Source: Macrostomum lignano
Lineage: Eukaryota
Assembly: GCA_002269645.1 (NCBI GenBank)
Contig: NIVC01000875.1
Coordinates: forward strand, 62,001 to 126,000
Length of the DNA stretch: 64,000 nt
Direction: 5' to 3'
Shown here: positions 37,401 through 64,000 of the stretch, in pieces
Layout of the letters: every line of letters starts with the position of its first letter
Numbering within the stretch: the first letter of the stretch is position 1
Made by a program: the position numbers and the translations under genes
The notes under the pieces: model-generated
What the model was told of the DNA's origin: nothing
The model's database searches: none
Seen by the model: only the letters and a program-made list of their open reading frames with translations

Positions 37401-37752
37401 CCTGTACCTGTATGAGCGGCTGACATGGACCGGCCGGGCCAGGGAGCGCCTGTTCAAGCGGCAGTATGTAGACTATGCCACGGCTAAGCTGCGGCTTATT
37501 GTCGATTTAACGTCGTCTAACGCTTCGCATCAGGTTCGCCAGGAGCTGGTCATGTGCCAGAAGAAACTGCTGCATGAGGTCGAATCTGAGGAGGCTTCGA
37601 AAATGTCCGAAGCGGAGAGACTGGAACGCCTCATCCGCAGGCTAGAGGAGGTCTGCTCAACCGCTAAGCGGCTGAAAAATCAGGCAGCCTTTTTGGACAA
37701 AACTTTGGCTAATTTTCATCAGACCCACATACTGCAGGACCGGCAGGAATAA
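31473..37752 (+). CDS. MFN: Mitofusin (fzo/Marf-type dynamin-like GTPase); exons 31473-31973, 33145-33617, 33725-33822, 33965-34224, 35450-35896, 37093-37752; 812 aa
   Basis: FFGRTSNGKSTVINAMLGRKVLPSGIGHTTNCFLQ|VEG (P-loop); LLDSPGVDV; FVLNNRWD; YFVSAKE; EEIRRL; CADFREDIEFRFSL; transmembrane segment followed by GWR...YGGLYLYERLTWT; HR2. All introns are GT-AG with consistent phases (2439 bp total). Confidence 0.95.
32035..33105 (+). repeat. 24-25 bp minisatellite (tctgtctgatcccatctccccaaat) filling mitofusin intron 1
   Basis: Tandem units are directly visible and account for the spurious minus-strand ORFs. Confidence 0.95.
34257..35420 (+). repeat. 21-22 bp minisatellite (atcccttcatccagtgtctgt, grading to atccagcatctcacacccctt) filling mitofusin intron 4
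   Basis: Tandem units; source of the PFIQCLY / SLHPVSV / IPSSSVC pseudo-ORFs. Confidence 0.95.
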
Positions 37753-46088: not shown

Positions 46089-48355
46089 ATTTTGCGGTCT
46101 GTATCGGTCTAGGAGAAGTAAACCCTTGTTAGCAGATAATAAGGAGTTAAAAGTTAGTGCGATCTGCGCTAGCAGTTTCTAAACGCAAAGTCTGTCTAAT
46201 ATATTATTAATAGCTAGCTACACACAGCCGAATTAACTTCGCCAGGCAGTGGTAGAAAATCTGGTTATAAGTCTTACAAACACATTCCACTCGAGCGTGC
46301 CAAATTCCATGCACAGCTGAGCTAATGCAAGCATAGTCAGATATCAAAGTACAGTTTGCACAAGTTACGGAGCCGTGAACACTGTAGCTCGTTCTGCGCA
46401 GCATAGGCTGGCACTGGCAGAAATGAGGAGAGGCGTTCGATGGTATCTGCATGCTTATTCGAATGGCACGGCAGAATGTTTATGGCAATGGCAATCCAAT
46501 CCAGTCCAAGCTAAATCGCTTTTTCTGCGCTTTACTTTCTTAATAGATAAGCCGGCGCATGCAGCCCCAAACCACCATAGCTTTGCAATCCAACTACTAT
46601 TAGTAGGCATTTGTTGGATATTTACAAACTCTAACGTAAGCCAACTCAAAGCCCCAAATGGAGACGTCGTATTTAGGCAGATTAACAAAGTTTACCGATA
46701 AGATAATTAAGGTAGTTTCACTACTTTTGTATTGCAGAAACCCCCCGGACAGGTAGCTACCGTTGCTAGTTCACTTTTTAAGGCTAATTTTAATTCTGAT
46801 CAAGTTTCACCTCGTTCAGGCATTTTAGTATATACACAAGTTTTCTTACTTAAAGTTTGTTATAGTAAATTCTGTCAGACTCTACAGAAGCTGTTTATCG
46901 CTAGTATAAACTTTTCTCTGCAAAGATTCGCACAATCAGTATAGAGTCAACTATAACATGCTGCTGGTCGTAGTAGTTTCAACATGTCGCATATTAACTG
47001 CACGTAAAGTTTTCGAGAATCTGAATTTTTTCAACTACAATTGGACAGTTTTTTTATGCTGGCATGAGGATATAGTATGAAGCTCGTAACTGCATCAATA
47101 GTCCGCAGCTTGTATGTAGGATATTGCGAGCATTTATGCATCCTGGAGTATGAAGGCCAACTGCAAATCCCGGAGATCCTATATACAAATGTCAGTCTGA
47201 ACAAGCAAGCTTTCTAAATAGTCTTTTATTTCGAGAGGCGTCTCCATCTTTTCTGTCTGTCTTTTCCAGTGTTTCTATCTACCTCCCGCCTACGCAGATC
47301 TGCTCAAACTGAGAGAGCCATTTGTTATACGCTCATAGCCTCGTTTCTATTTTTACGGCAGCCTTTCGTCACCTCAACTCTCTCTTACCTCCAGCCCAGA
47401 CGGTTCCAGCCAAGCCGCTGGTTTGTTTAAATTTCAAATATTTGCATTGAATTTTCGCACCAAGACGCTTCTTTAGAAGACATTTTCTACTCGGTCTGGA
47501 AGTTTATTAAAGTTTGTCTAGATTAAACTATAAGATTACAGTTTAAAAATTAAATTACACTCGTGATTTTGATCGGATCAGAAATCTAGAGCCATAGAAA
47601 ATATGAGGCTTTTTTCGTGAAGATTTCTTTTGCAAGAAATTAATCAACGTTTAACATTCCTTTTCTTTCTTTGCTCAACACTGAATTTTGGATGAACTTG
47701 ACATTAGCTGGAAAGTTAAAGCCTGATACAAAAGGCTGAACGCTCTCTGAAAATCTTTTTCTCTCTTTCCTACTAGCCCTGTCTTTTTAAAAGAGATAGA
47801 AGAAGCCCTGACACAGCCACTGTCACAGAGCAGAAGATGTGGGGGGCAGAGAGGGGTCCATTGTCATTGAGCATCGCTACAGCAAGGAGCGGACAAAAGA
47901 AGCTCTCTAATGCCAGCTGCACTTGAGCACAGAGCCGCTCACAGAACACTACTTGCAGAGGCTGAGAAGAAAAGCACTGGCTAAGGCGTTTTAGGCCACC
48001 GTGTTATTGACCCCCAAGCTATTCAGCGCTGCATACAGCTCTCGCTGCGGCACGCGTTCGTGAAACACGCATTCCTCCCGCCCCGAGCCCTTCGCCCTGC
48101 AAGGCTAATGTAGGAGACAGAAGTGAGATGCCAGCAATGTGTATTTATTTACAACCGAGAGATCGTCTATGCGCTCAAGTTTCCGGCTTTGAGCTGTTTG
48201 TGTAATTTTGTTGTTTTGCTCGCTCCGAGCTCTTGAACGCGACTTCGGAAATAGCCATTGTCGGGCGAAAACAAGCCAACAACAGGCTGAGTCAGGCGGC
48301 AGGGTTGGGTCGCGCCGCAGCTACGGGCGGGGACGTGGCGTCGACGACCCGTCTG

Positions 48356-49975
48356 ATGGCTCAGCCGGCTCAGCAGCTGCTGCTCCATCTGCTACTGCTG
48401 ATGCTGACAACCTCTCTGCTGACCTCGCAAGCCTCCAGCGCCGCTGTCAAATCCTCGGATAAACTCGAAGAGGAGCTGCTGCAACTCCGCGAGCTGATCG
48501 CCTCCGAGCTTGAACGACGAGCAGCAGTTAGGCTAGAAGATGGCGACAGTCCGGCGCTGACTGACAGGAAAGCTCCAGCCAGCCTCGCCGATGTCGTGGC
48601 CGGCGCCAAGGCCTACGCCTCCGGCCTGGCTACCTCTGCGGCTCCACCGCCGCCTGGAACCACGCTTGAACTTAAGGACGAAGCTGTGACGCCGATATGG
48701 AGCAACAGTTCCAGCAGAGTGAACGGCACCAGCCCCGCGGGTCTGTTCAGTCCGCAGTGGTTCGCGCACCTGCTGACCGTGATGCCGCTGGCCGCCTGGA
48801 TCGCAGTGCTCTGCGGCGCCGGGCTGCTGCTCTGCGCCCTGCTGGCTCTCATCATCTACTGCTGCTGCTGCCGCTCTAAAGATTTCTACGACGGCTCACG
48901 GCAACGCTTGAAACGGCAAGATGGATACGGTATGACGTTCAAAGATTTGGACATTGTTGGCAAAGAGCAGCCTCCGTACGGCGTCATTAACTATTCGCTG
49001 GAGTACGACGTTCCCTCATGCGAGCTCATCATCACCGCGACCAGCTGCATCGGCCTACCGAAGGATCTCAAGCAGCTCGATCCCTACCTTGTAATGCACG
49101 TGTCGCAGGATTCCATTGCGGGCAAGAAGAAGCATCGCTCGCACTCGGCAGGGCAAACTTCTGAGCGCTCCAAAATAGTGAAGAACACCGTCAATCCGGC
49201 CTTCAACTACACCCGGGTAGTCAAGATCAGGGATAAGCGGCTGCTCAGGCGAACCGTCATCAAGTTTGAGATCTACGACTACGACATCGGCAGTCGGCAC
49301 CAGATGATCGCTCGCCGAGAGCTGAAGCTGGCCAAGCTGGGCGAGAAGCTGGACGACATCCTCGGTAGGAAGGTGGAGTACACGAAAAACTTGAAAGCAG
49401 GCATTAATGAGGAGGCCAATGGACCTGGTGACATCTGCCTGGCTCTGTGCTACAGCACAATGGACAAATTGAACAAGTACCTGTGGGTGCATGTCATCGA
49501 GTGCAAAGGTGTGTTCATTCAACGCTTCGGTGAGCCGGATTTCGACACCCTGCCCAACACCTACGTGAAGCTGGCACTGCATGTTCCCGGCAGCAGGCGG
49601 ACGATCCAGTCCACCAAGCTCATCAAGGCGTCGAGAAATCCGTACTTCAACGAACAGTTCATATTCAAGACAGAGCTGAGCGAGTACATCAGTCTGAGAG
49701 TCTCTCTGATGCACCGCTCCGAGACCCTCGGTATTAAGCGGGTGATCGGGTCGCAGACGCTGTCGATGCAGGCAGACAAAGACAGCATCGAGCGGCTTCA
49801 CTGGAGAGACGTGCTTGAGAAGCAGGACATCCCGAGCGCGCGCTGGCACAGTCTGGTCACGCCAGAGGATGAGCGCAAGACCACGGAGCGCAAGGAGGCC
49901 GAAGAGCGAAAGCGAAAACTTGAGCGGGCGGAGGATGAGGCAGCGGCGGCGGCGGCCGCGGCTCTGTACCAGTGA
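48356..49975 (+). CDS. Intronless synaptotagmin-like protein (signal peptide, luminal region, TM, tandem C2), ~539 aa from the likely Met
   Basis: MAQPAQQLLLHLLLLMLTTSLL signal-like segment; TM ending in CCCC; C2A (GVINYSLEYD...DPY...NPAFN...IYDYD) and C2B (GDICLALCY...YVKL...RNPYFNEQFIF). The open frame extends upstream to 48233. Confidence 0.85.
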   Translation: MAQPAQQLLLHLLLLMLTTSLLTSQASSAAVKSSDKLEEELLQLRELIASELERRAAVRLEDGDSPALTDRKAPASLADVVAGAKAYASGLATSAAPPPPGTTLELKDEAVTPIWSNSSSRVNGTSPAGLFSPQWFAHLLTVMPLAAWIAVLCGAGLLLCALLALIIYCCCCRSKDFYDGSRQRLKRQDGYGMTFKDLDIVGKEQPPYGVINYSLEYDVPSCELIITATSCIGLPKDLKQLDPYLVMHVSQDSIAGKKKHRSHSAGQTSERSKIVKNTVNPAFNYTRVVKIRDKRLLRRTVIKFEIYDYDIGSRHQMIARRELKLAKLGEKLDDILGRKVEYTKNLKAGINEEANGPGDICLALCYSTMDKLNKYLWVHVIECKGVFIQRFGEPDFDTLPNTYVKLALHVPGSRRTIQSTKLIKASRNPYFNEQFIFKTELSEYISLRVSLMHRSETLGIKRVIGSQTLSMQADKDSIERLHWRDVLEKQDIPSARWHSLVTPEDERKTTERKEAEERKRKLERAEDEAAAAAAAALYQ

Positions 49976-50960: not shown

Positions 50961-51925
50961 TCTTCCCTTTGGTGGCCCTAGAGGTAAAGAAATTTTGCCG
51001 ACGCCAGATTTAGATATACAAGTTTAATTTTGAGTCTTACAACGATATTTGAAGTTGCGCCTGAATTGTGAAACCATATGCGGAGCGGACTTGTGCGATC
51101 GTGTGTACAGGAAATAGATTGGCTTATGCCACCTTTACGCTCGGTAAAATTTCAATTAGAAAAATTCTTCATTTCTTTGATATAAGCAGCGAAATTTGCG
51201 CAGTAAACGCAAGAACTGATATTTCCGCTGAGTGCTTTAAATAAACTCTGCAATTGTTCGCAAGGAATCGTACTGAAGGTATTCAAGTATATGTATTCGA
51301 CTATTTAGTAATTGAATCATGGAGTGTCATCACTGTACTACTTATATAGGGTTCAGGGTTAAATTTAAAGGTTAGGGTTGAAGGAGATAGGATAGGATCG
51401 AACCAGGGACCCGTTAAACCAGTTGTCCCTGGGTTGAACGTTTAGAGTAAAAGGGTCAGAGTAAAGCTGGGGTTACGCTAAAAGAGTTAGGGTTAACGGG
51501 TTAGGGCTCACGGGTTCGGGTTTGAAGGGTTAGGGTTGAAGGGTTAGGGTTGAAGGGTTGGTTGTTGAAGCATGTAGTAGGCCTGTAAAACATTTTTCAT
51601 GTAGGGGTCTCCCTAAGTAGAATTAGTAGACGTAGCCTAGTAGAATTACTCTTAGTAGAGTTATTACCGAAGAATACGCGCCACGTTCTCTCCTACGAGT
51701 ATTGCAAAATTAAACTACGTGTGGTCTAGTCTAATGTCGGTAAAAATCTAATTGCGTCGTTGGATATTGCCCCCAACCTACCACTGCGGTGCATTCTTTA
51801 TATTAGCTGTCGACCACTCACTGACAAAACGCTAGCGTTACCGCATGGGCATCGCAAAAACACCATTTTCAGTCAGCCACAATCGAAAGAAAAGCTACAA
51901 CAAAGTAACAAAATCAATCGACTCT

Positions 51926-52672: not shown

Positions 52673-53324
52673 GCACGGATTGCAGGGGTGCAAAATGAGT
52701 CCTGCCGGTATTTGACCTATTGTTCGTGACCTCTATTTCATATTCATTCAGTTCATGATTCAGCTTTAAGGCTTATCTGCATGTACAATAATTAATTCCT
52801 TAGTTTTACCAATGCGGAGTTAGCGCGGTAAGATGTGAAGCTAAGACACTTTTTATTCAGCTTTCTAAGTCAGCACTGTAATTTTCATTTGCGCCTCTTG
52901 CCAATGATACAAATTTTTATCATTTCATAGAACTTTTTTGAAGTCACGGTCATGTACTCGCATAGCTTTTACCATCAGTACTTTTGTTAATATTTCTTTG
53001 AATATTTACTTTTTAATTGTTTTTCATATTTTTTATAGGAAAACAGGCTATTCAATAATGATTGAGCAATACCTAGAGGTACCTATACACATGCAATATT
53101 TGTCTGTTCCTTCAGTTGCTGCGAAAACAAAAGCCGGAGAAAACAAGTGTGCAGAGTTTTTTGTTTCTCCTTTCACCCTGACAGATGCTTTGCTCATGTA
53201 CCCTCGTATCTATGGTAAAAAGCGCAACTTCAAACTGGAATAATCCGCATCGCTCCTATCGTTTTGGTCAGAAATTTTAGATTCCGCAGGGGAATTAAAC
53301 ATCAATCCCCCTTCAGCATCATTC

Positions 53325-54592
53325 ACACCTCAGCAACATTCCCCTCACCATCACCTCCCTCACCATCATCCCCCATCACCATCATCACCCATCACCATCA
53401 TCCCCCATCACCATCATCCCCCATCACCATCATCCCCCATCACCATCATCCCCCATCACCATCATCCCCCATCACCATCATCCCCCATCACCATCATCCC
53501 CCATCACCATCATCACCCATACCATAATCCCCCCTCATCATCATCCGCCCTGCGCATCATCCCCCTCATCATCATCCACCCTGCGCATCATCCCCCCCTC
53601 ATCATCATCCGCCCTAAGCATCATCCCCCCTCATCATCATCCGCCCTGCGCATCATCCCACCTCATCATCATCCGCCCTAAGCATCATCCCCCTCAGCAT
53701 CATCGCCCCTCAGCATCATCCCCCTCAGCATCATCCCCTCTCAGCATCATCCCCCCTCAGCATCATCCCCCTTCAGCATCATCCCCCCTCAGCATCATCC
53801 CCCCTCAGCATCATCCCCCCTCAGCATCATCCCCTCTCAGCATCATCCCCCCTCAGCATCATCCCCTCATCATCATCCGCCCTGCGCATCATCCCCTCTC
53901 ATCATCATCCGCCCTGCGCATCATCCCCCTCATCATCATCCACCCTGCGCATCATCCCCCCTCATCATCATCCGCCCTAAGCATCATCCCCCTCAGCATC
54001 ATCCCCCCTCAGCATCATCCCCCCTCAGCATCATCCGCCCTAAGCATCATCCCCCCTCATCATCATCCGCCCTAAGCATCATCCCCCCTCAGCATCATCC
54101 CCCCTCAGCATCATCCCCCCTCAGCATCATCCGCCCTAAGCATCATCCCCCTCATCATCATCCGCCCTAAGCATCATCCCCCCTCAGCATCATCCCCCTC
54201 AGCATCATCCCCCCTCAGCATCATCCCCCTCAGCATCATCCGCCCTGCGCCCTGCGCATCATCCCCCTCATCATCATCCGCCCTGCGCCCTGCGCATCAT
54301 CCCCCTCATCATCATCCGCCCTAAGCATCATCCCCCTCATCATCATCCCCCTCATCATCATCCGCCCTAAGCATCATCCCCCTCAGCATCATCTCCCCTC
54401 AGCATCATCCCCCCTCAGCATCATCCCCCTTCAGCATCATCCCCCCTCAGCATCATCCCCCCTCATCATCATCCGCCCTGAGCTTCATCCCCCTTCAGCA
54501 TCATCCCCCTCAGCATCATCCCCCTCAGCATCATCCCCCCTCAGCATCATCCCCACTCAGCATCATCCCCACTCAGCATCATCCCCACTCAG
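53325..54592 (+). repeat. C-rich 12-21 bp composite minisatellite (catcatccccctcag and variants)
   Basis: Tandem units are directly visible. Confidence 0.95.
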
Positions 54593-55105
54593 CCCCTCTC
54601 TCCTGTCTTCTTTCTTCTCTATTCCCTCTGAAACGATCTCTCTCCTCTCCTCTGGGCCACAGTCATGCACTGGGGTGGCCCTACATGTATGGGTAAAAAT
54701 ATTGCCGGGCCCCCAATTTACATATACGAGTTTAATTTTGAGTCTTTTGACTTTTAACAAAATGTGAAGTTGTGAATGTCGTACAACCCCATGCGAAGCG
54801 GGCTTGTGCGGTCGTGTGTACAAGCAGTAGATGCACCGGGGTTACGCCACCTTTACGCTCGATAAAATTTCAATTAGGAAAATGTCTTAATTTATTCTTT
54901 GTTATAAGCCGCTGAAATGCACAGCAACCACAAAACTGATACGAGTATTTTTGCTGAAAATGTTTTGAAAAAAATTTCTACAAGGTACTACGGTTTTGAG
55001 TTCTACTGGAATCGCACTGAAAATGTTTGAGTATGCTAAATAATTTGCCATTGAAGCTAAATTGATATAGTTATCGCTGCACTACTCATGAGTCTCTTAA
55101 TAACA

Positions 55106-56492
55106 GGGTTCAGGGTTAGGGTTGAAGGGTTAGGGTTGAAGGGTTAGGGTTGATGGGTTGGGTTGAAGGGTTAGAGTTGAAGGGTTAGGGTTGAAGGGTT
55201 AGGGTTGAAGGGTTAGGGCTGAAGGGTTAGGGCTGAACGGTTAGGGTTGAAGGGTTAGGGCTGAAGGGTTAGGGTTGAAGGGATAGAATTGAAGGGTTAG
55301 GGTTGAAGGGTTAGGGTTGAAGGGTTAGGGTTGAAGGGATAGGATTGAAGGGTTAGGGTTGAAGGGTTAGGGTTGAAGGGTTAGGGCTGAAGGGTTAGGG
55401 TTGAAGGGTTAGGATTGAAGGGTTAGGGTTGAAGGGATGGGATTAAAGGGTTAGGGCTGAGGGGTTAGGGTTGAAGGGTTAGGGTTGAAGGGTTAGGATT
55501 GAAGGGTTAGGGTTGAAGGGTTAGGATTGAAGGGTTAGGGCTGAAGGGATAGGATTGAAGGGTTAGGGCTGAAGGATTAGGGCTGAAGGGTTAGGGTTGA
55601 AGGGTTAGGGCTGAAGGGTTAGGGTTGAAGGGATAGAATTGAAGGGTTAGGGTTGAAGGGTTAGGGCTGAAGGGTTAGGGTTGAAGGGTTAGGGCTGAAG
55701 GGTTAGGGTTGAAGGGTTAGGGTTGAAGGGTTAGGGCTGAAGGGATAGGATTGAAGGGTTGGGGTTGAAGGGTTAGGGCTGAAGGGATAGGATTGAAGGG
55801 TTAGGGTTGAAGGGTTAGGATTGAAGGGTTAGGGCTGAGGGGTTAGGGTTGAAGGGTTAGGGTTGAAGGGTTAGGATTGAAGGGTTAGGGTTGAAGGGTT
55901 AGGGTTGAAGGGTTAGGGCTGAAGGGATAGGATTGAAGGGTTAGGGCTGAAGGGTTAGGGCTGAAGGGTTAGGGTTGAAGGGTTAGGGCTGAAGGGATAG
56001 GATTGAAGGGTTAGGGTTGAAGGGATAGGATTGAAGGGTTAGGGCTGAAGGGTTAGGGTTGAAGGGTTAGGGCTGAAGGGATAGGATTGAAGGGTTAGGG
56101 TTGAAGGGTTAGGGTTGAAGGGTTAGGGCTGAAGGGATAGGATTGAAGGGTTAGGGCTGAAGGGTTAGGGTTGAAGGGTTAGGGCTGAAGGGATAGGATT
56201 GAAGGGTTAGGGTTGAAGGGTTAGGGTTGAAGGGTTAGGGCTGAAGGGATAGGATTGAAGGGTTAGGGCTGAAGGGTTAGGGTTGAAGGGTTAGGGCTGA
56301 AGGGATAGGATTGAAGGGTTAGGGCTGAAGGGATAGGGCTGAAGGGTTAGGGTTGAAGGGTTAGGGCTGAAGGGATAGGATTGAAGGGTTAGGGCTGAAG
56401 GGATAGGATTGAAGGGTTAGGGCTGAAGGGTTAGGGCTGAAGGGTTAGGGCTGAAGGGATAGGATTGAAGGGTTAGGGTTGAAGGGTTAGGG
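55106..56492 (+). repeat. 14-bp G-rich satellite (GAAGGGTTAGGGTT)n containing TTAGGG; short degenerate copy at 51348-51570
   Basis: About 100 tandem units, with variants gggctgaa and gataggattgaa. Confidence 0.95.
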
Positions 56493-57632
56493 TCGTCTCT
56501 CTTCTTACGTATATTGCTTGTACTGTGCAACTGAATTGCATTGCCATAACAAAGTCTGCTCAAGGAATATGGAGCTACATGAACTCATAAATAATTAGCA
56601 TACTACGAGCGCGTACATAGTAAATAATTTAATTCGGTACCTTTTGTTTGGCTTAGCTATTTACCTCTTCAGGTAGGTCAGAAGGAAAATTCTTTAAAAA
56701 TAATTGAGTATCTCAACGGTCCTGAATTATATATCAACTTCAAACGTGCTGCAAATGCACACAACTCAACTTATATGAGTTGCTTACAAGCGTATGGCAG
56801 TAAAGCATTTTTCAGGTAGGGGACTCTTTAGAAGAATTAGTAGACGTGGCCAAGCAGAATTACTCTCAGTAGAGTTACTGGAAGAATAAGCGCCATGTTA
56901 TTTCCTAGTGCATAATTAAACTACGTGTGGTCTATTGTCTAATGCCGATGTGCCCTTCAACCCACCCCTGCGACGCATCCTTTAGCTATACCCGCCAAAC
57001 TTAATTCGTCCGATTTTTTGCTTTTAGCACCGGTATCTTGATCCGGTTTATTGTCCGGAATCGGCCCATATCCACAGTGTAAAGAAACCGGAACAGAGCC
57101 GGATAAAAAGTTACGTTTCAGGACCAGGCGTTCAGATTTTATCGCCTTTGCCCTGTTTTATGTCCGGTGATTATTCCGAAGTTTGTTCCGGTGCCTGATC
57201 CGGTCAAAGAGAGCCGGATGTTGCGCCGGTTTTGTTCCGGTGCCTGATCCGGTCAAAGAGAGCCGGATGTTGCGCCGGTTGCTGGACCGTGGCATTGACC
57301 GATCCAAATGGGATCGAGACCGGACCGAAAGCCGGACCGGCCCGGTTTAATATTGAACCGTTCTCTCCGGAGCAGGAGGCAGTCTTCCACGCGAATAGAA
57401 AATGAAAAGAAAATTGAAGAGTTTAAACTGAAGTACTTTTTTTTCAATCCAGGCATTTGTCAACCTTTCCATTTCCATGGCAATTTATTTTTACTTCCGA
57501 AACATCGAAAGCACCGAACATCGCAAATCACACATGGTCCCTTACAAATGCGTCGCTTCCCTTCTGGCGCTCACAAATGAGTCATAAAGGTGATAAAGGT
57601 GATAAAGGACGTTCAATTGGCCGAACCAACCG

Positions 57633-59544
57633 TCAAACCGCAAGCTTCAGCAAGTCAACGAGGCTACCGGCCGACTGCAAATCGTCCATGCTCGTGACGA
57701 GGTTAGCCGTCGTCACTGAAGCCGCCAACGTATCCGTAGCCGCAGTCGTAGTCGCAGGCGAAGGGTAAATGAGAACCGGATGGTTCTCATCAGGCTCCTC
57801 CATGACGAAAACGATGGCATGGGAGTCTGTCGTCGAGGAGGCCTTCTTCGGCCTCTTGGTAGCGCTTGGCCTCGGGCCGCTCGATCCGGGCCTCGGGCCG
57901 GTGATACGGCGGCACTTCAGTTTCGGCAGACCCTGGCGAACGCGTGCCGTCTCGCGGCAACGCGAGAAAGCGCGTTGTAGTTGGCGCTTAGTGGCGATGA
58001 CGCCAACGTTCTGCAGCCACTGCTTAGCGATAAGCAGTTTGGCTGGGTTAGCGGCAGCAGTCAGCCGGTCCCCAGCTTTCGGCCCGAGAAATTTGCGCCT
58101 GAAAACTCCGTCTCAGAGAACAGTGCCCGCAAGAGACACCGCAACAGCGACGAATGTTCCGAACGCAGTATTGCGGCGTAGTCCGGACGCTCTTCGTCGA
58201 TGTCCACATGTGGCTGGCCAGCCTTTTCTTTGGCCTGCAAATATGTACGGAGATGAGCTTCCAGTATAGAACGGCTCCCGACCTTGACAAATATATTCGG
58301 TTGGCGGTCCGACAGTGCGACGCGCCCACCGCTATTACTAGCACCGGCCGAGTTTTCAGCGCTGCAGGCAGTCATTATCGCGTGGGTGTCGCTGGCAGAC
58401 AAGGCAGCGTCAGCGACGAAGCGTTTGGCCGAGAAATCACTATCGTCCGCGCTATCACAGCTCATGCGTGTTTCGTCGTCGCTGTGACCAGCGACGTGTG
58501 TGCTAGTATCAGCATTGGTGGACAAATTGTCCGGGTCGGCAACAAGCATAGTGGACGCCCTGATCAGGAATGCGTTGCATGATTGCGCCCTGTTTTGCAT
58601 CTGCCGAATGACGTTGTCCTTGCGACGAATCTCACGCTCAAGGCTGCTCTCGCGCAGCGCCAAATAGGAGGTTCGCTCCTTCGCGTCGTCCAGACGCCGG
58701 CGCAGCTCCACTTCGGCAGCCGACTTGTCTCGTATCTCGCCTCCTGTCAGTGGAGACAAAAGTTAATGTTACTCCGATCAATCATACATTCCCCAGAACA
58801 TTCAACACTTACTTAGTGTCTCCACTAAGATGTCCGCCTTGCGACTTTCCAGTAGCAGGCTTCGACAGGACGCGCAGCCTCGAGGTGGCTCTCTGGTCGG
58901 GGCGTGCACATTCGTGAGGCGACAAGAAGCCGTCGCTTCTTCACGACTTTCGAAGGGCCCACGGATGAGAGTGCCGATCCACCGACGGGCAGTTTTCCTA
59001 TTACTTTTGGCCACTTTAATGGCAACAACACTCCCAACAGAAACTGGGATGGGTCCGTCGCTGCGGCGCTGCACAAATTCTCCGTAGTGGAGACAACGTC
59101 CGTGCGTTCCCGGGATTCGTCATAGCGCATGATGAAGAAGCGCTCGGTAGGCTCTTGCTTGTACGGGAGCATATCGGATCCTTCTTTCGACGGGTTGCCA
59201 CCGTCCCGGTTGACTCGCCTGCCACGTGTGTCTCGATCGCCAGAATCAGTAGCTGAGCACCCCGCCTCATGGGCGAAGCAATCGTCTGCGTCTGCACCAT
59301 TGGGCGTCGGATTTGCGGTTGGCGGCTTAGGTATGGTCGTCTGGACAGCATCGATCACGGGTGTTAGCGTGTCACTGCCAGCTGGTAGATTACCATTCGC
59401 AGCTGGCTGATCGTCCTTCGGCTTCGCCTTCGCCTTCTTCAGAGATCTTGGAGCTTTAGACTTCGAAGCAGTACTAGCCGCAGCGGCGGGAGCTGCGGGA
59501 GCGGCAGCTTTTTTTCCGCTTGCGAAGCAGGTCGCCTTGCCCAT
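57633..59544 (-). CDS. BEN-domain protein with coiled coil; exons 59544-58813 and 58743-57633; two apparent 1-bp frameshifts (~59082, ~58078)
   Basis: Phase-1 intron (a|GTAAGT...gacAG|ga). After correcting the frameshifts: ...DVVST/EFVQRRSDGPIPVSVGSVVAIK..., coiled coil, then LLRCLLRALFSETEFSGANFSG/KAGDRLTAAANPAKLLIAKQWLQ...LQRAFSRCRETAR, a BEN-like pattern. Confidence 0.6.
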
Positions 59545-60255
59545 TTAAAGACTGTAAGACATGGAGCAGGTTTTGAAATTAGGTAATTCCACGTAGAGAT
59601 GACAAAACTCACGAGTAAGAAAAGTGTGTTCGCCTGCTTCTACGAAGAGACATGCAAGATGTACAGTATGTGCCTAGGCGTGTAGAAACTCGAAACTAGA
59701 ACGAAAAAGGAAACTAGATTATGCAACATCTATAGTATGCAAGAAACTATACTACAGTTAATAGAGTATGCAAGTTAAAGAACTTTCGAAAGAAGACAGC
59801 TGACAGATACCCAGCGCTTCGCGTGGAGCTGCAGCTCAACAAAAGCAAATCGTTGTTTTTATTGGCATTTCGTCTGTAGCTCCCAGCTCTTCTCCAGATC
59901 CAGACTCCATCATGCAGTCAAAAAGGTGGTAACGAAGAATAACATTAAAAACATACCTCCCCTGTTTACTCCCATGCAGAATTACATGGATGCTGCCACA
60001 AGAAAATTAAGTAGGTATATGTGCACATGTGTAGTTCGCTTAAGAATCAAACAACAACAATCAAACAATAGAGCAAGTTTTTTCTATTGCGCAAATCGAA
60101 ATTACCGTGTCAATGCCTACACTGAGTAACATACTAACGTCCCTCACTAACTAACTCACTCACTAACCTGGAGTCAGTCACGCCTTCGAGAGGATCAAAA
60201 AGTCGGGATCTAAAAAAGTGTGGCTTTTAGTATGCTGCCCAGTATATCAGTCCAA

Positions 60256-61137
60256 TCAATTCTTTCCGTGGGCCTTCTTCTCCTGCTGGAGCTCACGCAG
60301 ATCCCTTAGTGGCCGTCTGCGGCGGCGTAGCGGTCGCATTGCCGCCACAGGTGCTTCCGGCGGAGTCTCGGGCATGTCAATCGCCCAGAACTGACGTGGA
60401 TCCGCAATGGGTTTCGGTTGGTTCGACCGGTGTTTGCCGGCCTGCTGCAGTCGTCTTTGGCGGCTTTCTGGAGACAGGTTAGAATACCACGACTCGCAGT
60501 CCGGACAGCAGTGCGCCTGCAATTCTAGCCTGTCGGCTTTGCGCCTGCATGGGAAGACGCACGCCGGTCTCGAAGTCCTCTCCGGCAACAGGTTGTAATC
60601 AGCGCGGATTTGAGAAGACGACATGCCGGCATACAGGCCTGCAAAGAGACTGACCCGGCGGCTGGGTTCCGGTGCCGGCTCTGCGGCGGGTGGTACGTGG
60701 TACATGTCAGGGCCCTGCGTCTCAGAACCCTCCTCGTCGTCGTAGTTGAACCTGTCGACTGCCTCGGGTTCCGGTGCCGGCTCTGCGGCGGGTGGTACGT
60801 GGTACATGTCAGGGCCCTGCGTCTCAGAACCCTCCTCGTCGTCGTAGTTGAACCTGTCGACTGCCTCATCGGCGGGTTCCTCATTCGATGCCGCCACGGG
60901 TTTCGCTAGCACAAGTGGAGTCGAATCGAAAGGCCACATCGACTGCAACACTTGCGTACTAGGAATGTCATCTAATGCGACGATGGCCCTATGCGCCCGC
61001 ACCATGGACCCCGTGTTAAAAACTGGCGACGTGGGACGTGAACGGCCGAGTCGAAGGAGCTCAGAACGGAGCAAACGGTTCTCCTCTGTGAGGGCGCGGC
61101 AGATGGGACAGCTGGCTGCGTGTGACCAGTGGTCCAT
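60256..61137 (-). CDS. Compact CtIP/Sae2-like protein (N-terminal CxxC + short coiled coil, C-terminal SAE2-type domain), 293 aa
   Basis: C-terminal RRKADRLELQAHCCPDCESWY...RQRRLQQAGKHR...DPRQFWAIDMPET matches the CtIP signature (RKK.ER..L....CxxC..YY......RHR......TP..FW...FP.T). N-terminal CPIC...EENRLLRSEL. Confidence 0.8.
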   Translation of the reverse strand: MDHWSHAASCPICRALTEENRLLRSELLRLGRSRPTSPVFNTGSMVRAHRAIVALDDIPSTQVLQSMWPFDSTPLVLAKPVAASNEEPADEAVDRFNYDDEEGSETQGPDMYHVPPAAEPAPEPEAVDRFNYDDEEGSETQGPDMYHVPPAAEPAPEPSRRVSLFAGLYAGMSSSQIRADYNLLPERTSRPACVFPCRRKADRLELQAHCCPDCESWYSNLSPESRQRRLQQAGKHRSNQPKPIADPRQFWAIDMPETPPEAPVAAMRPLRRRRRPLRDLRELQQEKKAHGKN

Positions 61138-61455
61138 CGCTGTAAAATTGGGGTAATCGTTATGGCGCTGAAGCGCGTTACCGTTCGAAATTCACAGCTA
61201 TTCAACATACTGTGTATACAGCATACTATACTGTACTACAACTAATAGAGGTGCTGGAACTAGTCGTACAGTAACTATAACGATACAAATACAGATCACA
61301 GCAGAAACTGTCGCTGAGTTTGATTTCGACGTGAACGAGTATGTCCGATGACATCCTAGATGCTATAGTCATTGTACAAACGGAAGCAGAAGACAACAGA
61401 AAGGCAATGTGTTTTAACTCTTTTAGTTTTCGTCTCGTTTATTTCAATACCTACC

Positions 61456-61689
61456 TTAATTATATACCTTAGTGTTACATAGAACGGAAGAATTGAAACT
61501 ATAACTTTCATTTTTTAGGCGAAGAAACACATCATCACATTGTCTTAACTTCGAGCAATGAAGACATAACAAACGCTTGTACTGCTGTTCTCGTTGAGAC
61601 AGTCTGACTGGAGCAAAATAGGTGTACATTTTTGGGTGGGCGTGACAGGAATTGGATATGTATTGTTTAGCCTCGGACCACTTAGTCAT
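61456..61689 (-). CDS. Small 77-aa ORF with CxxH and CxxC motifs between the transposase and the CtIP-like gene
   Basis: SCHAHPK...LCLHCSK; co-oriented with the element's genes; ATG start. No homology recognised. Confidence 0.3.
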   Translation of the reverse strand: MTKWSEAKQYISNSCHAHPKMYTYFAPVRLSQREQQYKRLLCLHCSKLRQCDDVFLRLKNESYSFNSSVLCNTKVYN

Positions 61690-61738
61690 CTTAGCCAGTA
61701 GTTAGCGACAAAACAAAGCACCGAAGCATCCGAGTGGA

Positions 61739-64000
61739 TCAATGATATGACAACTGTGGGTGAGGCAACAGTGCGATGTGGCTCTCGGAAAGGACACACG
61801 AACCGATGACATCCTCAAGCGGTAGTAGTAGCGGATCTCCGTAGTCCGCCAAATCGCCGAATGGATCGGCTGCAAGCCGCCGCACGTGAGCGCAACGGCA
61901 GCCACGCCTAGCGGAATTGCCACGTACAGCACATAGTGCCTCTAACGGGTCCTGATCTGGTTCGCGGACCGGTAGAATTAGGACCCGAAGTGACACTTGT
62001 GCACCGGTACTACTAATGGCTTCAACTCGTGCAAAACGAAATGTCGTCGGACGAAACCCGGAAATTGCAACGAAACACGATGCTACAGTGCGGCGCAGTG
62101 GGCGGTTATCGTTTTGTCGGCTGATGAAAACTACAATGACCAGCCCTGAGGGCAGTGTCGCACTGCGCCACCCATCCAGCATGCCATGCGGTCGTCGAAG
62201 AACTATGGAGTTACGGAGAACGATTTCCGTGCGCCGATGGCTCCGTTGTCGCCTCTCCAAGCCCTCAGCACCTAGCAGACGCGCTCCAATCTGGTTGGCG
62301 GCTATCTGTCTCTCCACTGACGTAACCACGTCAGCCTCGTTGTTGCTCGAGCCATGAAGGAGCTGTTGTAATCGTTTGTGCATGGTTTCGAACAACCCAG
62401 TTGATTGATGATGTATCGGCCCACCGGAGTCTACAGCGCTCAGCATGTGGCAGCAAACTTGATGGGCGTTGTACGTAAGCGCCCGAGTGGAATATAAGCG
62501 CGGTAAATTTGCGAGGAAGCATCTGAGGGACACCTCGACGTGGTCCAGTTCGTCCTTTGGCCCACCTTCAAGTCCCATCCAAAACACAGCCGTTGATAGA
62601 ACTAGTAAATGGTTGTAGTGGTCCGGCGGCAGAAAATCACCCAGAACGAGCGGAGCGAACACTAAAATCCACATTTCTAGTTCGTGTCCACGAAGATGGC
62701 GCAGGTCCTTCAGCTTCCTAACACTGTGGCGTTGCACTGATCGTGGCACGAGAATGCGATTGAGACGCTCGCCGACATCGCCAAGTCTGGGGTGCAGGTC
62801 CGGACAGTTAGTGTCTGCACGGTCTGGCTTCTCATTGCGGATTGCGAACATCTGTAGCAATATCCGACGAACGAGCCCGCCGCACAACTGGTGCAAATAA
62901 CAGGGCGGACAACCTTTTATAAAATCAAAGCCAGGCAGCCTGCTTAGAGGAGAGTGTCCGTACACACCGAGTACGTCGCGGCAAGTACCACCGCCGTTGC
63001 TCACATGTAGATCGGCAAGGTGCGAAGTGTCAGCAGCATTACGCACTGTTGTCTGTGTACAGCCTAGCATAGCAGGAGCGTTCAACATGGCGGGTGTAGC
63101 TTCGACGTGAAAAAGTCGCCCGCCGCCTTGCAAGTAACCGGTCCGCAGATAGCATTTGTCGCAGTATTTTCCGGAAAAGCGACGCATGCATAGAGCGTCC
63201 GCCCTCGCCGGGGCGTCCATCATCCCAAGGAGGGGATGGAGGCGCAGGACGCAAGTCTCGCCGTTGGCGTTGTTGTACGTTACACCTATGGTACGCAGGC
63301 TGGACAAGACGTTTACCATAACAGGCAGAAATGCGGCGGCCTTGACTTTTTGCTTGCCAGCCCACACTCCTGCGATGAAAACGTATCGCAGTTTAACTCG
63401 GTCGTGTACCTCTACGATGGAAATGTAGAATGGGCACACTTCGACGCAGCTAGTACTGAACCGAGGAAAACCATCGAAGCAGAAAACGTACGACAGATCG
63501 GCTCGGCGCTGTACATCGATGACCTCCAGAAAGTCTCGGTACAACGAGCTGTTGTACACGTGCAAAACGTCCGGCTGCACGTCGCGGTCAGCAGGCCAAA
63601 CGACGTTGTCAAGAAGTCCACCGCTCTCGATAGACTGTCGGATCTGCTGACGCACGTCGAATGCGTAAAAGTTGGCCACAGATTCTTCGCCGCAGTGTGC
63701 ACAGACGTCACCATCGGAAACGTGCCGAAAACGAGTGCGACGCATGCAGCTATTGCAAACGGCGTTGCAAACCGTCGAACCAATCGCTGACTGCGCTGAG
63801 CTGACGCACGACTCCAGACTTCGTCTTGTTCGCGGTAGACTACAGCCTGGCATAAGGCGATGAAGCAGCGCCATCAGTTTGTCGACTACATGATGCTTCA
63901 TGTGCGTCTCTATGACGAACAGCATAATGTCTGACGCAGCCTGGCCCAGCGTTCCCGGAAGCGCTGGATGGAACGGCTGATGCAGTTGTGCATCCGGTAC
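61739..64000 (-). CDS. CMC-EnSpm (CACTA-type) DDE transposase, 5' end outside the window
   Basis: CxxC...CxxC N-terminal finger; FCFDGFPRF (D1); MMDAPARA...FSG.YCDKC (D2); GVYGHSPLSRLPGFD; CYLH (C/DxxH); TYNAH; GPI...LFE (E). The frame stays open from 63925 to the window end (VPDAQLHQPFHPALPGTLGQAASDI). Confidence 0.9.
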   Translation of the reverse strand, partial: VPDAQLHQPFHPALPGTLGQAASDIMLFVIETHMKHHVVDKLMALLHRLMPGCSLPRTRRSLESCVSSAQSAIGSTVCNAVCNSCMRRTRFRHVSDGDVCAHCGEESVANFYAFDVRQQIRQSIESGGLLDNVVWPADRDVQPDVLHVYNSSLYRDFLEVIDVQRRADLSYVFCFDGFPRFSTSCVEVCPFYISIVEVHDRVKLRYVFIAGVWAGKQKVKAAAFLPVMVNVLSSLRTIGVTYNNANGETCVLRLHPLLGMMDAPARADALCMRRFSGKYCDKCYLRTGYLQGGGRLFHVEATPAMLNAPAMLGCTQTTVRNAADTSHLADLHVSNGGGTCRDVLGVYGHSPLSRLPGFDFIKGCPPCYLHQLCGGLVRRILLQMFAIRNEKPDRADTNCPDLHPRLGDVGERLNRILVPRSVQRHSVRKLKDLRHLRGHELEMWILVFAPLVLGDFLPPDHYNHLLVLSTAVFWMGLEGGPKDELDHVEVSLRCFLANLPRLYSTRALTYNAHQVCCHMLSAVDSGGPIHHQSTGLFETMHKRLQQLLHGSSNNEADVVTSVERQIAANQIGARLLGAEGLERRQRSHRRTEIVLRNSIVLRRPHGMLDGWRSATLPSGLVIVVFISRQNDNRPLRRTVASCFVAISGFRPTTFRFARVEAISSTGAQVSLRVLILPVREPDQDPLEALCAVRGNSARRGCRCAHVRRLAADPFGDLADYGDPLLLPLEDVIGSCVLSESHIALLPHPQLSYH

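What the first reader, a model, noticed from the sequence alone, without database searches (positions are those of the whole stretch)
60361..60550. Natural phosphomimetic at the CtIP CDK site
Anchoring on FW, human CtIP (recalled) RHR...PPN-T847-PENFWEVGFPS-T859-Q aligns with KHR...PIA-D-PRQFWAIDMPE-T-P. The CDK-target Thr is replaced by Asp (codon 60402-60400), and the ATM/ATR-type TQ becomes TP. T847E is known to partly bypass CDK control of resection. This copy may therefore be cell-cycle independent, as expected for a selfish-element version. It is also stripped to an N-terminal CxxC/coil plus the MRN-activating domain.
Basis: partly seen in the sequence, partly recalled or inferred. Interest (0 to 1): 0.87.

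Follow-up and report, generated by a model that had tools for sequence, protein, structure and literature searches.

The report
Transposon-carried CtIP gene lacking CDK threonine
A mobile DNA element in a flatworm-like genome carries an intact copy of the DNA-break-processing factor CtIP in which the threonine used by the cell cycle to switch the protein on is replaced by a charged aspartate, but ordinary host CtIP genes in two other animals have also lost that threonine, so the change cannot be credited to the element.

Summary
Window 60256-61137 (-) is an intact 293-aa CtIP/Sae2-family ORF. It passes Pfam's SAE2 threshold and matches a family profile at E 5e-22. Codon 60402-60400 is GAT (Asp246). 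MAFFT, BLAST and a profile built without this sequence all place Asp246-Pro247 on the conserved Ser/Thr-Pro site, which 61 of 67 relatives keep. Thr258 falls on the second site, 12 residues on, as in mouse-numbered T843/T855.

The gene lies inside a mobile element. A terminus homologous to the inverted repeats of a 10-kb marine transposon (L001) starts at 56991. The gene order transposase, ORF3, ORF4 is shared with L001, and the CtIP gene is an extra gene between transposase and ORF3.

- The closest relative is the three-exon host CtIP of the flatworm Macrostomum lignano, and it has no Ser/Thr at this site either.
- A host-context animal CtIP has Glu-Pro there.
- Thr-Pro at the second site is as common as Thr-Gln.
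- An invariant Thr-Pro remains in this copy, so independence from CDK is not shown.

Only one element copy with the gene is known, and its function is untested. Verdict: a real, unusual transposon-borne CtIP, whose Asp is not demonstrably an element-specific adaptation.

The parts
56991..64000 (-). TIR DNA transposon. Its 3' end is at 56991 and its 5' part is cut off by the window end. Genes are on the minus strand.
   Evidence: The terminus CCCGCC... at 56991 aligns with both inverted repeats of L001, and similarity begins exactly there. The gene order is colinear with L001.
56991..57400 (.). Terminal repeat homologue plus a CCGG-dense subterminal region, which includes a perfect 49-nt tandem duplication at 57182-57279.
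   Evidence: CCGG occurs 46 times per kb here against 1.9 per kb in the rest of the window. The L001 ends have 46-56 per kb against 1.5 per kb inside. Tandem duplication.
61739..63925 (-). Transposase-like ORF (728 aa), intact.
   Evidence: It is 49% identical over its full length to P0001 of L001. D151, D237, C255-x2-C258, H488-x4-H493 and E513 are invariant. No Pfam hit.
60256..61137 (-). CtIP/Sae2-family ORF (293 aa), intact and without introns.
61048..61110 (-). N-terminal CxxC (residues 10-13) and helix (residues 11-30).
   Evidence: The AlphaFold2 helix has pLDDT of about 88. Residues 14-33 align with residues 125-144 of the fish CtIP P0032, with 0 of 300 shuffles reaching the score.
60664..60867 (.). 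Perfect 102-nt in-frame tandem duplication inside the CtIP ORF. It doubles the DDEEGSETQ block.
   Evidence: The motif is shared with M. lignano.
60331..60561 (-). C-terminal Sae2/CtIP domain (residues 193-269), with C211-x2-C214, K235-H236-R237, F250-W251 and P256.
   Evidence: Profile match at E 4.8e-22. Conserved columns.
60400..60402 (-). Asp246 codon (GAT), at the position of the CDK-target Ser/Thr.
60361..60366 (-). Thr258-Pro259, at the position of the second (vertebrate T-Q) phospho-site.
58825..59544 (-). Element ORF3 (239 aa), function unknown.
   Evidence: Homologous to the 242-aa ORF of L001 (tblastn E 7.7e-10).
57936..58759 (-). Element ORF4, function unknown. It shows one frame change (or an intron) relative to its L001 homologue.
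   Evidence: tblastn with the 255-aa ORF of L001 gives two pieces in different frames.

Best explanation
Shown:
- An intact, intron-less CtIP/Sae2-family gene sits as an internal gene of a terminal-inverted-repeat DNA transposon.
- Its closest relative is the host CtIP of the flatworm Macrostomum lignano.
- It keeps the family's C-terminal anchors (CxxC, HR, FW, P-x-T-P and the basic RRRRRP tail) but has Asp-Pro where most relatives have Ser/Thr-Pro.

Inferred:
- The gene was copied from a macrostomid-type host CtIP into the element.
- The protein still docks on Mre11-Rad50 through the conserved loop. Because it has no phospho-acceptor at this position, CDK cannot switch that contact.
- The fixed negative charge could stand in for the phosphate only if the host Rad50 keeps the partner arginine.
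- Loss of the acceptor is most likely a trait of this flatworm lineage, inherited or parallel, rather than an adaptation of the element. The M. lignano host gene lacks it too, and the column reads T, A (or Q) and D among the closest relatives.
- The most plausible use to the element is to supply an MRN co-factor at the breaks its own transposase makes. These may be hairpin-capped flanking ends if the transposase works like its Transib/RAG-type motif relatives. This biases repair without waiting for S/G2.
For: Gene identity and intactness.

Register of Asp246.

Element-borne status:
- L001 is a transposon of about 9.95 kb with 33-nt inverted repeats (97% complementary) and CCGG-dense subterminal arrays.
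- The window has the homologous terminus at 56991 and the same subterminal composition.
- The order transposase, ORF3, ORF4 is the same on one strand.

Host origin:
- The best hit is M. lignano PAA54340.1/PAA88737.1, 53% identical over the C-terminal 113 aa, with a shared DDEGSET motif.
- That gene has three exons in an ordinary gene neighbourhood at two loci.

Lineage-wide loss of the acceptor: M. lignano has no Ser/Thr in the segment. The P0038 cluster has Glu-Pro in a host context.

Literature:
- T847 (Sae2 S267) is the CDK site. T847E, but not T847A, rescues function and opens RAG-made hairpins in G1-arrested Artemis-null cells (PMC6605744).
- Phospho-S267/T847 is modelled as a salt bridge to Rad50 R77/R79, and S267E keeps partial activity. 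S. pombe Ctp1 has Ile at this position, paired with Leu in Rad50, and acts without CDK (bioRxiv 10.1101/2023.08.05.552090).
- hAT, Transib, MULE and RAG make hairpins on flanking DNA (PMC5499845).
[quoted passage not shown] The same pattern is invariant in ORF728 and P0001.
Against: - Only one element copy with the gene is known. The only relative of the element (L001) has no CtIP-like sequence in any frame.
- There are no expression data.
- The N-terminal region is reduced to one 20-residue helix and no tetramerisation motif was found, so the protein may not assemble like canonical CtIP.
- The transposase superfamily is unresolved. There is no Pfam hit, the termini are not CA..TG, and the structure model is unusable (pLDDT 32). 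The hairpin argument therefore rests on a motif pattern read from two sequences.
- The host CtIP and Rad50 of the source species were not available.
- No target-site duplication or poly(A) marks how the gene got in.
Confidence: 0.5

Rival explanations
1. Asp246 is an adaptive, element-specific phosphomimetic. It makes the transposon's own CtIP constitutively active in all cell-cycle phases, in contrast with a CDK-gated host CtIP.
For: Asp sits exactly on the acceptor column with the following Pro kept. 61 of 67 relatives keep Ser/Thr-Pro. Glu at this site partly replaces phosphorylation in human and yeast proteins (PMC6605744; 10.1101/2023.08.05.552090). A second related fragment (L004) also has Asp near this position.
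Against: The nearest host gene (M. lignano) has already lost the acceptor. A host-context CtIP has Glu-Pro, so acidic residues are not element-specific. Thr258-Pro259 remains as a possible CDK site. The host CtIP of the source species is unknown. L004 carries one in-frame stop and has no known context.
Confidence: 0.2
2. A passive passenger. It is a recently captured host gene copy with no role for the element, still intact only because it is young.
For: L001 lacks it. Perfect 102-nt and 49-nt tandem duplications point to very recent sequence turnover in this copy. The N-terminal region is shortened. GC3 (0.66) resembles host ORFs (0.68-0.74) more than the transposase (0.56).
Against: All family anchors are conserved at only 53% identity to the closest relative, so the sequence was under constraint for most of its history. 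The ORF is open over 882 nt and the internal duplication is in frame.
Confidence: 0.2
3. An interfering variant. With the MRN-binding C-terminus but without the tetramerisation region, the protein competes with host CtIP and damps resection rather than promoting it.
For: Only one short helix is predicted. It aligns with the distal coiled-coil segment and not with the tetramerisation motif, which is residues 18-32 in the human protein per PMC8205527.
Against: Short CtIP-family proteins exist in the same clade, for example P0003 at 315 aa with a similarly placed helix. The M. lignano N-terminus is itself incomplete in the record. Nothing shows an inability to oligomerise.
Confidence: 0.05
4. Not element-borne. 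It is the host's own CtIP gene, and the transposon genes around it are unrelated fragments that landed on either side.
For: The 5' end of the element lies beyond the window, so the paired repeats could not be seen. No second copy is available.
Against: Transposase, ORF3, ORF4 and the terminus keep the order, strand and spacing of L001, with the CtIP ORF in the single transposase-ORF3 gap. No direct repeats bracket the ORF.
Confidence: 0.05

Closest known systems
CtIP / Sae2 / Ctp1 family (Pfam PF08573), MRN/MRX endonuclease co-factors
   Same: The C-terminal domain has CxxC, HR, FW, P-x-T and a basic tail. It scores above Pfam's curated threshold, and 66 relatives were found by phmmer.
   Different: Asp replaces the CDK-target Ser/Thr. 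The N-terminal region is very short. The gene has no introns and lies inside a DNA transposon.
Macrostomum lignano host CtIP (PAA54340.1 / PAA88737.1)
   Same: It is the closest sequence: 53% identical in the C-terminal domain, with a shared DDEGSET motif and the invariant P-x-T-P second site. It also lacks the CDK acceptor.
   Different: The host gene has three exons and lies between ordinary genes. It has Ala/Gln rather than Asp, is 481+ aa long and has a longer N-terminal helix region.
Engineered phosphomimetics: human CtIP-T847E and yeast Sae2-S267E
   Same: An acidic residue at the same column, followed by Pro. These mutants partly replace CDK phosphorylation (PMC6605744; 10.1101/2023.08.05.552090).
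   Different: Here the residue is natural and is Asp, not Glu. Its activity has not been measured. In the literature the mimic is only partial.
S. pombe Ctp1, a natural CDK-independent variant
   Same: The acceptor at this column has been lost naturally (Ile283), and MRN stimulation works without CDK (10.1101/2023.08.05.552090).
   Different: Ctp1 uses an apolar contact that co-evolved with Rad50 Leu77. The window protein has a charged residue, and its Rad50 partner is unknown.
P0038 cluster, an unnamed metazoan CtIP last exon next to ADAMTS genes
   Same: A natural acidic residue (Glu-Pro) at the CDK column. All five cluster members have it.
   Different: It sits in a host-like context, not in an element. 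It also has Asp/Glu at the second site, where the window keeps Thr.
Cargo-carrying DNA transposons of the EnSpm/Mirage/Chapaev/Transib clade and the KDZ group (for example the fungal elements carrying TET/JBP genes, PMC12730594)
   Same: A TIR element with a large DDE-type transposase, extra ORFs and a captured host-type enzyme or co-factor gene. The D, D, C(2)C, H(4)H, E motif order is shared.
   Different: There is no statistical match to any described transposase family. The termini start CCCGC, not CA. The cargo is a DNA-repair co-factor. None of the full-text searches run here turned up a transposon-borne CtIP.

Membership tests
CtIP/Sae2/Ctp1 (PF08573) | C-terminal domain matches the family model above the curated threshold | tested here: met
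   22.7 bits against a cut-off of 19.8, E 2.2e-4. A profile of 61 relatives gives E 4.8e-22.
CtIP/Sae2/Ctp1 (PF08573) | Conserved anchors: CxxC, (R/K)HR, F-W, P-x-T and a basic tail | tested here: met
   C211/C214, K235-H236-R237, F250-W251, P256-x-T258 and RRRRRP are present. C211, C214 and H236 are invariant, and R237, F250, W251 and P256 are at least 90% conserved, across 50 sequences.
CtIP/Sae2/Ctp1 (PF08573) | Ser/Thr-Pro CDK acceptor after the HR motif (human T847, yeast S267) | tested here: not met
   Asp246-Pro247. The feature is not universal in the family: S. pombe has Ile283 (10.1101/2023.08.05.552090), and M. lignano and the P0038 cluster also lack it.
CtIP/Sae2/Ctp1 (PF08573) | Second phospho-site Thr (human T859), an S/T-Q site in vertebrates | tested here: inconclusive
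   Thr258 is present at the right spacing (+12), but it is followed by Pro. TP is as common as TQ among relatives.
CtIP/Sae2/Ctp1 (PF08573) | N-terminal oligomerisation region (tetramerisation motif plus coiled coil) | tested here: inconclusive
   One helix, residues 11-30, matches the distal coiled-coil segment of vertebrate CtIP. No counterpart of the tetramerisation motif was found.
CtIP/Sae2/Ctp1 (PF08573) | Stimulates the Mre11-Rad50 endonuclease | not testable with these tools
   This is a biochemical property. No Rad50 or Mre11 of the species was available.
TIR (cut-and-paste) DNA transposon | Terminal inverted repeats that bound the element | tested here: inconclusive
   Met in the relative L001 (33 nt, 97% complementary). 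In the window only one terminus (56991) is present, recognised by homology. The other end lies beyond base 64000.
EnSpm/Mirage/Chapaev/Transib (CMCT) clade | [quoted passage not shown] | tested here: inconclusive
   D151, D237, C255-x2-C258, H488-x4-H493 and E513 are invariant in two sequences. The assignment was made by eye, without a statistical match.
EnSpm/Mirage/Chapaev/Transib (CMCT) clade | Sequence or fold match to a described transposase family | tested here: not met
   No Pfam family even at E<=5. Only P0001 was found among 5.8 billion proteins. The AlphaFold2 model has pLDDT 32.
EnSpm/Mirage/Chapaev/Transib (CMCT) clade | 5'-CA..TG-3' termini and 2-5 bp target-site duplications | tested here: not met
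   The termini begin CCCGC in the window and at both ends of L001. The flanks of L001 show no matching duplication.

The most novel reading that the evidence does not exclude
A eukaryotic cut-and-paste transposon maintains its own end-resection co-factor. This would be a pared-down CtIP whose Rad50-contact loop carries a built-in negative charge, so that MRN can process the hairpin-capped or blocked breaks left by the element's transposase in any cell-cycle phase. It would be the first case of a transposon that carries its own licence for host break repair.
Probability: 0.15. Interest if true: 0.8.

Novelty: new variant of a known kind. Interest (0 to 1): 0.55.

Why it matters
CtIP phosphorylation at this threonine is the textbook switch that confines DNA-end resection to S/G2. 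Natural variants show how that switch can be rewired. A mobile element carrying a CtIP copy would link transposition directly to the choice of break-repair pathway, and none of the three full-text searches run here turned up such a case.

The comparison made here also gives a sober result. The acceptor has been lost or replaced by an acidic residue in at least two host-context animal lineages, M. lignano and the P0038 group. The column is therefore less fixed in animals than vertebrate and yeast work suggests. Whether the partner Rad50 residue changed with it, as it did in fission yeast, can now be asked with sequence data alone.

Tried and rejected
- Word-indexed protein search with the CtIP ORF found nothing. 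The exhaustive phmmer search was needed.
- PDB sequence searches with the whole ORF and with the C-terminal 95 aa found nothing.
- Classifying the transposase failed by several routes: Pfam, a profile search (one attempt timed out; the repeat found only P0001), JGI metagenome and IMG/VR scans and AlphaFold2 (pLDDT 32). Because the model was unusable, no fold search was run.
- A second metagenome scan with the CtIP alignment found nothing.
- Exact look-ups of the window's CtIP ORF and transposase ORF found no public contig, so the source organism could not be named.
- Rfam and tRNA scans of the window were empty.
- I looked for signs of retroposition of the CtIP gene into the element (flanking direct repeats, a poly(A) tail) and found none.
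- I considered that the N-terminal CxxC plus helix corresponds to the vertebrate zinc-hinge CxxC. The alignment there was not better than shuffles (P0022: 54 of 300), whereas the match to the distal coiled-coil segment was (P0032: 0 of 300).
- I considered that M. lignano might keep the acceptor in a shifted register. This was rejected because there is no Ser/Thr anywhere between its HR and FF anchors.

Full report
**1. What is at the coordinates**

The minus strand of 60256-61137 holds one open reading frame of 293 codons. Its translation ends with ...CCPDCESWYSNLSPESRQRRLQQAGKHRSNQPKPIADPRQFWAIDMPETPPEAP...RRRRRPLRDL.... Codon 60402-60400 is GAT, which is residue 246, Asp.

- Pfam's SAE2/CtIP C-terminus model (PF08573) matches residues 227-258 at 22.7 bits, above its curated cut-off of 19.8.
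- A word-indexed search found nothing.
- An exhaustive phmmer scan of 1.84 billion representative proteins found 66 relatives at E<=1e-3. All match through the same C-terminal stretch.

This is a genuine member of the CtIP/Sae2/Ctp1 family and not a chance motif.

**2. Is Asp246 really on the CDK site?**

All comparators came from the searches. Named ones are:

| Id | Source |
|---|---|
| P0022 | spotted gar RBBP8 |
| P0017 | a nemertean |
| P0013 | a sea anemone |
| P0041 | a spider |
| P0002 / P0068 | Macrostomum lignano |

P0078 is an 893-aa protein with Thr843 in PPNTPENFW and Thr855 in FPSTQT. PMC6605744 states that mouse T855 equals human T859, and that human T847 (yeast S267) is the CDK site. 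P0078 therefore gives the numbering bridge.

- MAFFT of 68 C-terminal domains puts I-A-D-P-R-Q-F-W of the window under P-S-T-P-E-N-F-W.
- A profile built from the 61 canonical sequences alone, without the window, puts Asp246 on the consensus Thr and Pro247 on the consensus Pro.
- Thr258 falls on the second site, 12 residues downstream, as in T843/T855.

At the first site the 67 comparators read TP in 42, SP in 19 and something else in 6. The window has one more residue than vertebrates between HR and FW, so a gap must be placed. In no register does the window have Ser/Thr-Pro in this segment.

**3. The surroundings: a DNA transposon**

Upstream on the same strand lies a 728-codon ORF (61739-63925). 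Downstream lie two further ORFs (58825-59544, and 57936-58759 with one frame change). The 728-aa protein has a single relative in 5.8 billion proteins. This is P0001, 49% identical over its full length, carried on a 10.2-kb Tara Oceans contig, L001.

L001 is a nearly complete mobile element.
- It has 33-nt terminal inverted repeats that are 97% complementary, at 97-129 and 10011-10043.
- Both ends carry CCGG-dense subterminal arrays, 46-56 CCGG per kb against 1.5 per kb inside.
- Its genes run transposase-like ORF, then a 242-aa ORF, then a 255-aa ORF. The last two are homologous to the window's ORF3 and ORF4.

In the window, similarity to both L001 repeats begins exactly at CCCGC at 56991. 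The next 400 bases have 46 CCGG per kb, against 1.9 per kb elsewhere in the window. The element therefore runs from 56991 to beyond the window end, and the CtIP ORF lies inside it, in the gap between the transposase gene and ORF3.

L001 has no CtIP-like sequence in any frame. The gene is an addition in the window's lineage, or a loss in L001's.

The transposase-like protein has invariant D151, D237, C255-x2-C258, H488-x4-H493 and E513. PMC12730594 describes this motif order for the EnSpm/Mirage/Chapaev/Transib/RAG1 clade. Three things argue against filing it there:
- no Pfam model matches;
- the termini are not CA..TG;
- the structure model was useless.

I treat that affiliation as a lead only.

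**4. Where the gene came from**

The best relative by far is the CtIP of the flatworm Macrostomum lignano. It scores E 9e-21, is 53% identical over the C-terminal 113 residues, and shares a DDEGSET motif in the disordered middle. In M. lignano the gene has three exons and sits between an acetyl-CoA synthetase gene and an EMP24 gene at two homeologous loci. That is an ordinary host gene.

The window copy has no introns. No poly(A) tract or bracketing direct repeats show how it entered the element. The source organism could not be named. A macrostomid-like flatworm is an inference from this one gene.

**5.

Four results bear on it.

(a) The M. lignano host gene has HRDNQRPPVQAPNFF, with no Ser or Thr between the anchors. 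BLAST places Ala-Pro opposite Asp-Pro, while MAFFT and the profile place Gln-Ala. Loss of the CDK acceptor is therefore not confined to the element copy.

(b) A cluster of five metazoan sequences (P0038 and relatives) has ...TKEP(D/N)(N/S)FW... and ...FP(S/T)(D/E)E.... That is Glu at the first site and an acidic residue at the second. One member lies on a 14-kb contig next to ADAMTS genes. Natural acidic residues therefore occur in host-type genes.

(c) At the second site, TP and TQ are equally common among relatives, 19 each. Thr-Pro is invariant among the window, M. lignano and P0003. It is the common invertebrate state, and it leaves a proline-directed site on the protein.

(d) Among the closest relatives the first-site column reads:
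- Thr in P0003, from a metagenome;
- Ala or Gln in M. lignano;
- Asp in the window;
- Asp nearby in L004, a 910-nt fragment that carries one in-frame stop.

The column is labile in this clade.

The literature adds a precedent. Fission-yeast Ctp1 has Ile at this position, paired with Leu instead of Arg in Rad50, and needs no CDK (10.1101/2023.08.05.552090). The same work models phospho-S267/T847 as a salt bridge to Rad50 R77/R79. Whether Asp246 mimics phosphate thus depends on a Rad50 residue I could not see.

**6. Architecture**

AlphaFold2 was run with a 50-sequence alignment (mean pLDDT 64). It gives one confident N-terminal helix (residues 11-30), a disordered region of about 130 residues, and short helices in the C-terminal domain. 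The loop 236-260 is unstructured.

The helix aligns with the distal coiled-coil segment of vertebrate CtIPs. Against P0032 residues 125-144, 0 of 300 shuffles reach the score. It does not align with the tetramerisation motif, which is human residues 18-32 per PMC8205527. The CxxC at residues 10-13 is real, but its equivalence to the vertebrate zinc hinge is not supported.

'Stripped' is a fair description. Short relatives do exist, though: P0003 is 315 aa.

**7. Most likely mechanism**

Shown: a conserved, open CtIP-family gene inside a TIR transposon, with no CDK acceptor at the Rad50-contact loop.

Inferred: the protein binds Mre11-Rad50 through the conserved loop, independently of CDK at this contact. 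If it serves the element, it does so by helping MRN process the transposase-made breaks. The link is attractive for two reasons. Transib/RAG-type enzymes leave hairpins on flanking DNA (PMC5499845). CtIP-T847E, but not T847A, opens RAG hairpins in G1-arrested cells (PMC6605744). Every step of that chain is inference here.

My estimates:
- lineage-inherited loss of the switch in a captured, probably functional copy: 0.5;
- a young passive passenger: 0.2;
- an interfering variant, or a gene that is not element-borne: 0.05 each.

**8. Novelty and verdict**

The CtIP family, natural loss of the CDK site (fission yeast) and engineered acidic mimics are all known. A natural Asp at this column and, above all, a CtIP gene carried by a DNA transposon were not turned up by any of the full-text searches I ran. 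I rate it a new variant of a known kind, with interest 0.55. The evidence rests on a single copy and has no expression or partner data. The descriptive checks listed under next steps would settle it.

Noticed in passing
window 60664-60867: A perfect 102-nt in-frame tandem duplication inside the CtIP ORF. It doubles a 34-aa block containing DDEEGSETQ. The same motif occurs once (DDEGSETL) in M. lignano CtIP, so it is probably a functional short motif, possibly a phospho-dependent docking site.
   Followed up: partly
window 57182-57279: A perfect 49-nt tandem duplication within the CCGG-dense subterminal region of the element. Like the 102-nt duplication, it suggests very recent sequence turnover.
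   Followed up: no
window 61139-61152 and 59552-59563; L001 3907-3918 and 7479-7490: Pyrimidine-rich ...AG acceptor-like sites lie 2-20 nt upstream of the ATGs of the CtIP ORF, of ORF3, and of the L001 transposase and 242-aa ORF. They may be cis- or spliced-leader trans-splice acceptors that resolve a multi-gene transcript.
   Followed up: no
L006 1081-1401 (P0038 cluster): A metazoan CtIP last exon next to ADAMTS genes has Glu-Pro at the CDK column and Asp/Glu at the second phospho-site in all five cluster members. This is a natural double acidic variant in a host-type gene.
   Followed up: partly
L004 (Logan SRR31628425), 910 nt: A fragment of a CtIP-like gene, 40% identical to the window copy, with Asp near the same column and one in-frame stop. 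Organism and context are unknown.
   Followed up: partly
window 55112-56493, 53300-54593 and 51482-51559: A telomere-like 14-mer satellite (AGGGTTAGGGTTGA, about 99 copies) and a 16-mer satellite (CATCATCCCCCCTCAG, about 81 copies) lie just outside the element end. Segments around 50.7-51.7 kb and 54.6-56.9 kb are diverged duplicates of each other.
   Followed up: no
window 40145-43044 (-): A LINE-like retroelement with an endonuclease/exonuclease/phosphatase domain and a reverse transcriptase domain. The reverse transcriptase is split over two overlapping ORFs, so there is at least one frame break.
   Followed up: no
window 31473-37752 (+) and 48233-49975 (+): Host genes: mitofusin exons (a dynamin-type GTPase start, and the fzo C-terminal region at E 2e-49) and an ORF with C2 domains. 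They confirm that the window is ordinary eukaryotic chromosomal DNA.
   Followed up: no
L001 97-700 and 9650-10043: The marine relative of the element has units of about 153 nt of CCGG-containing subterminal repeats at both ends. No target-site duplication is visible next to its inverted repeats.
   Followed up: partly
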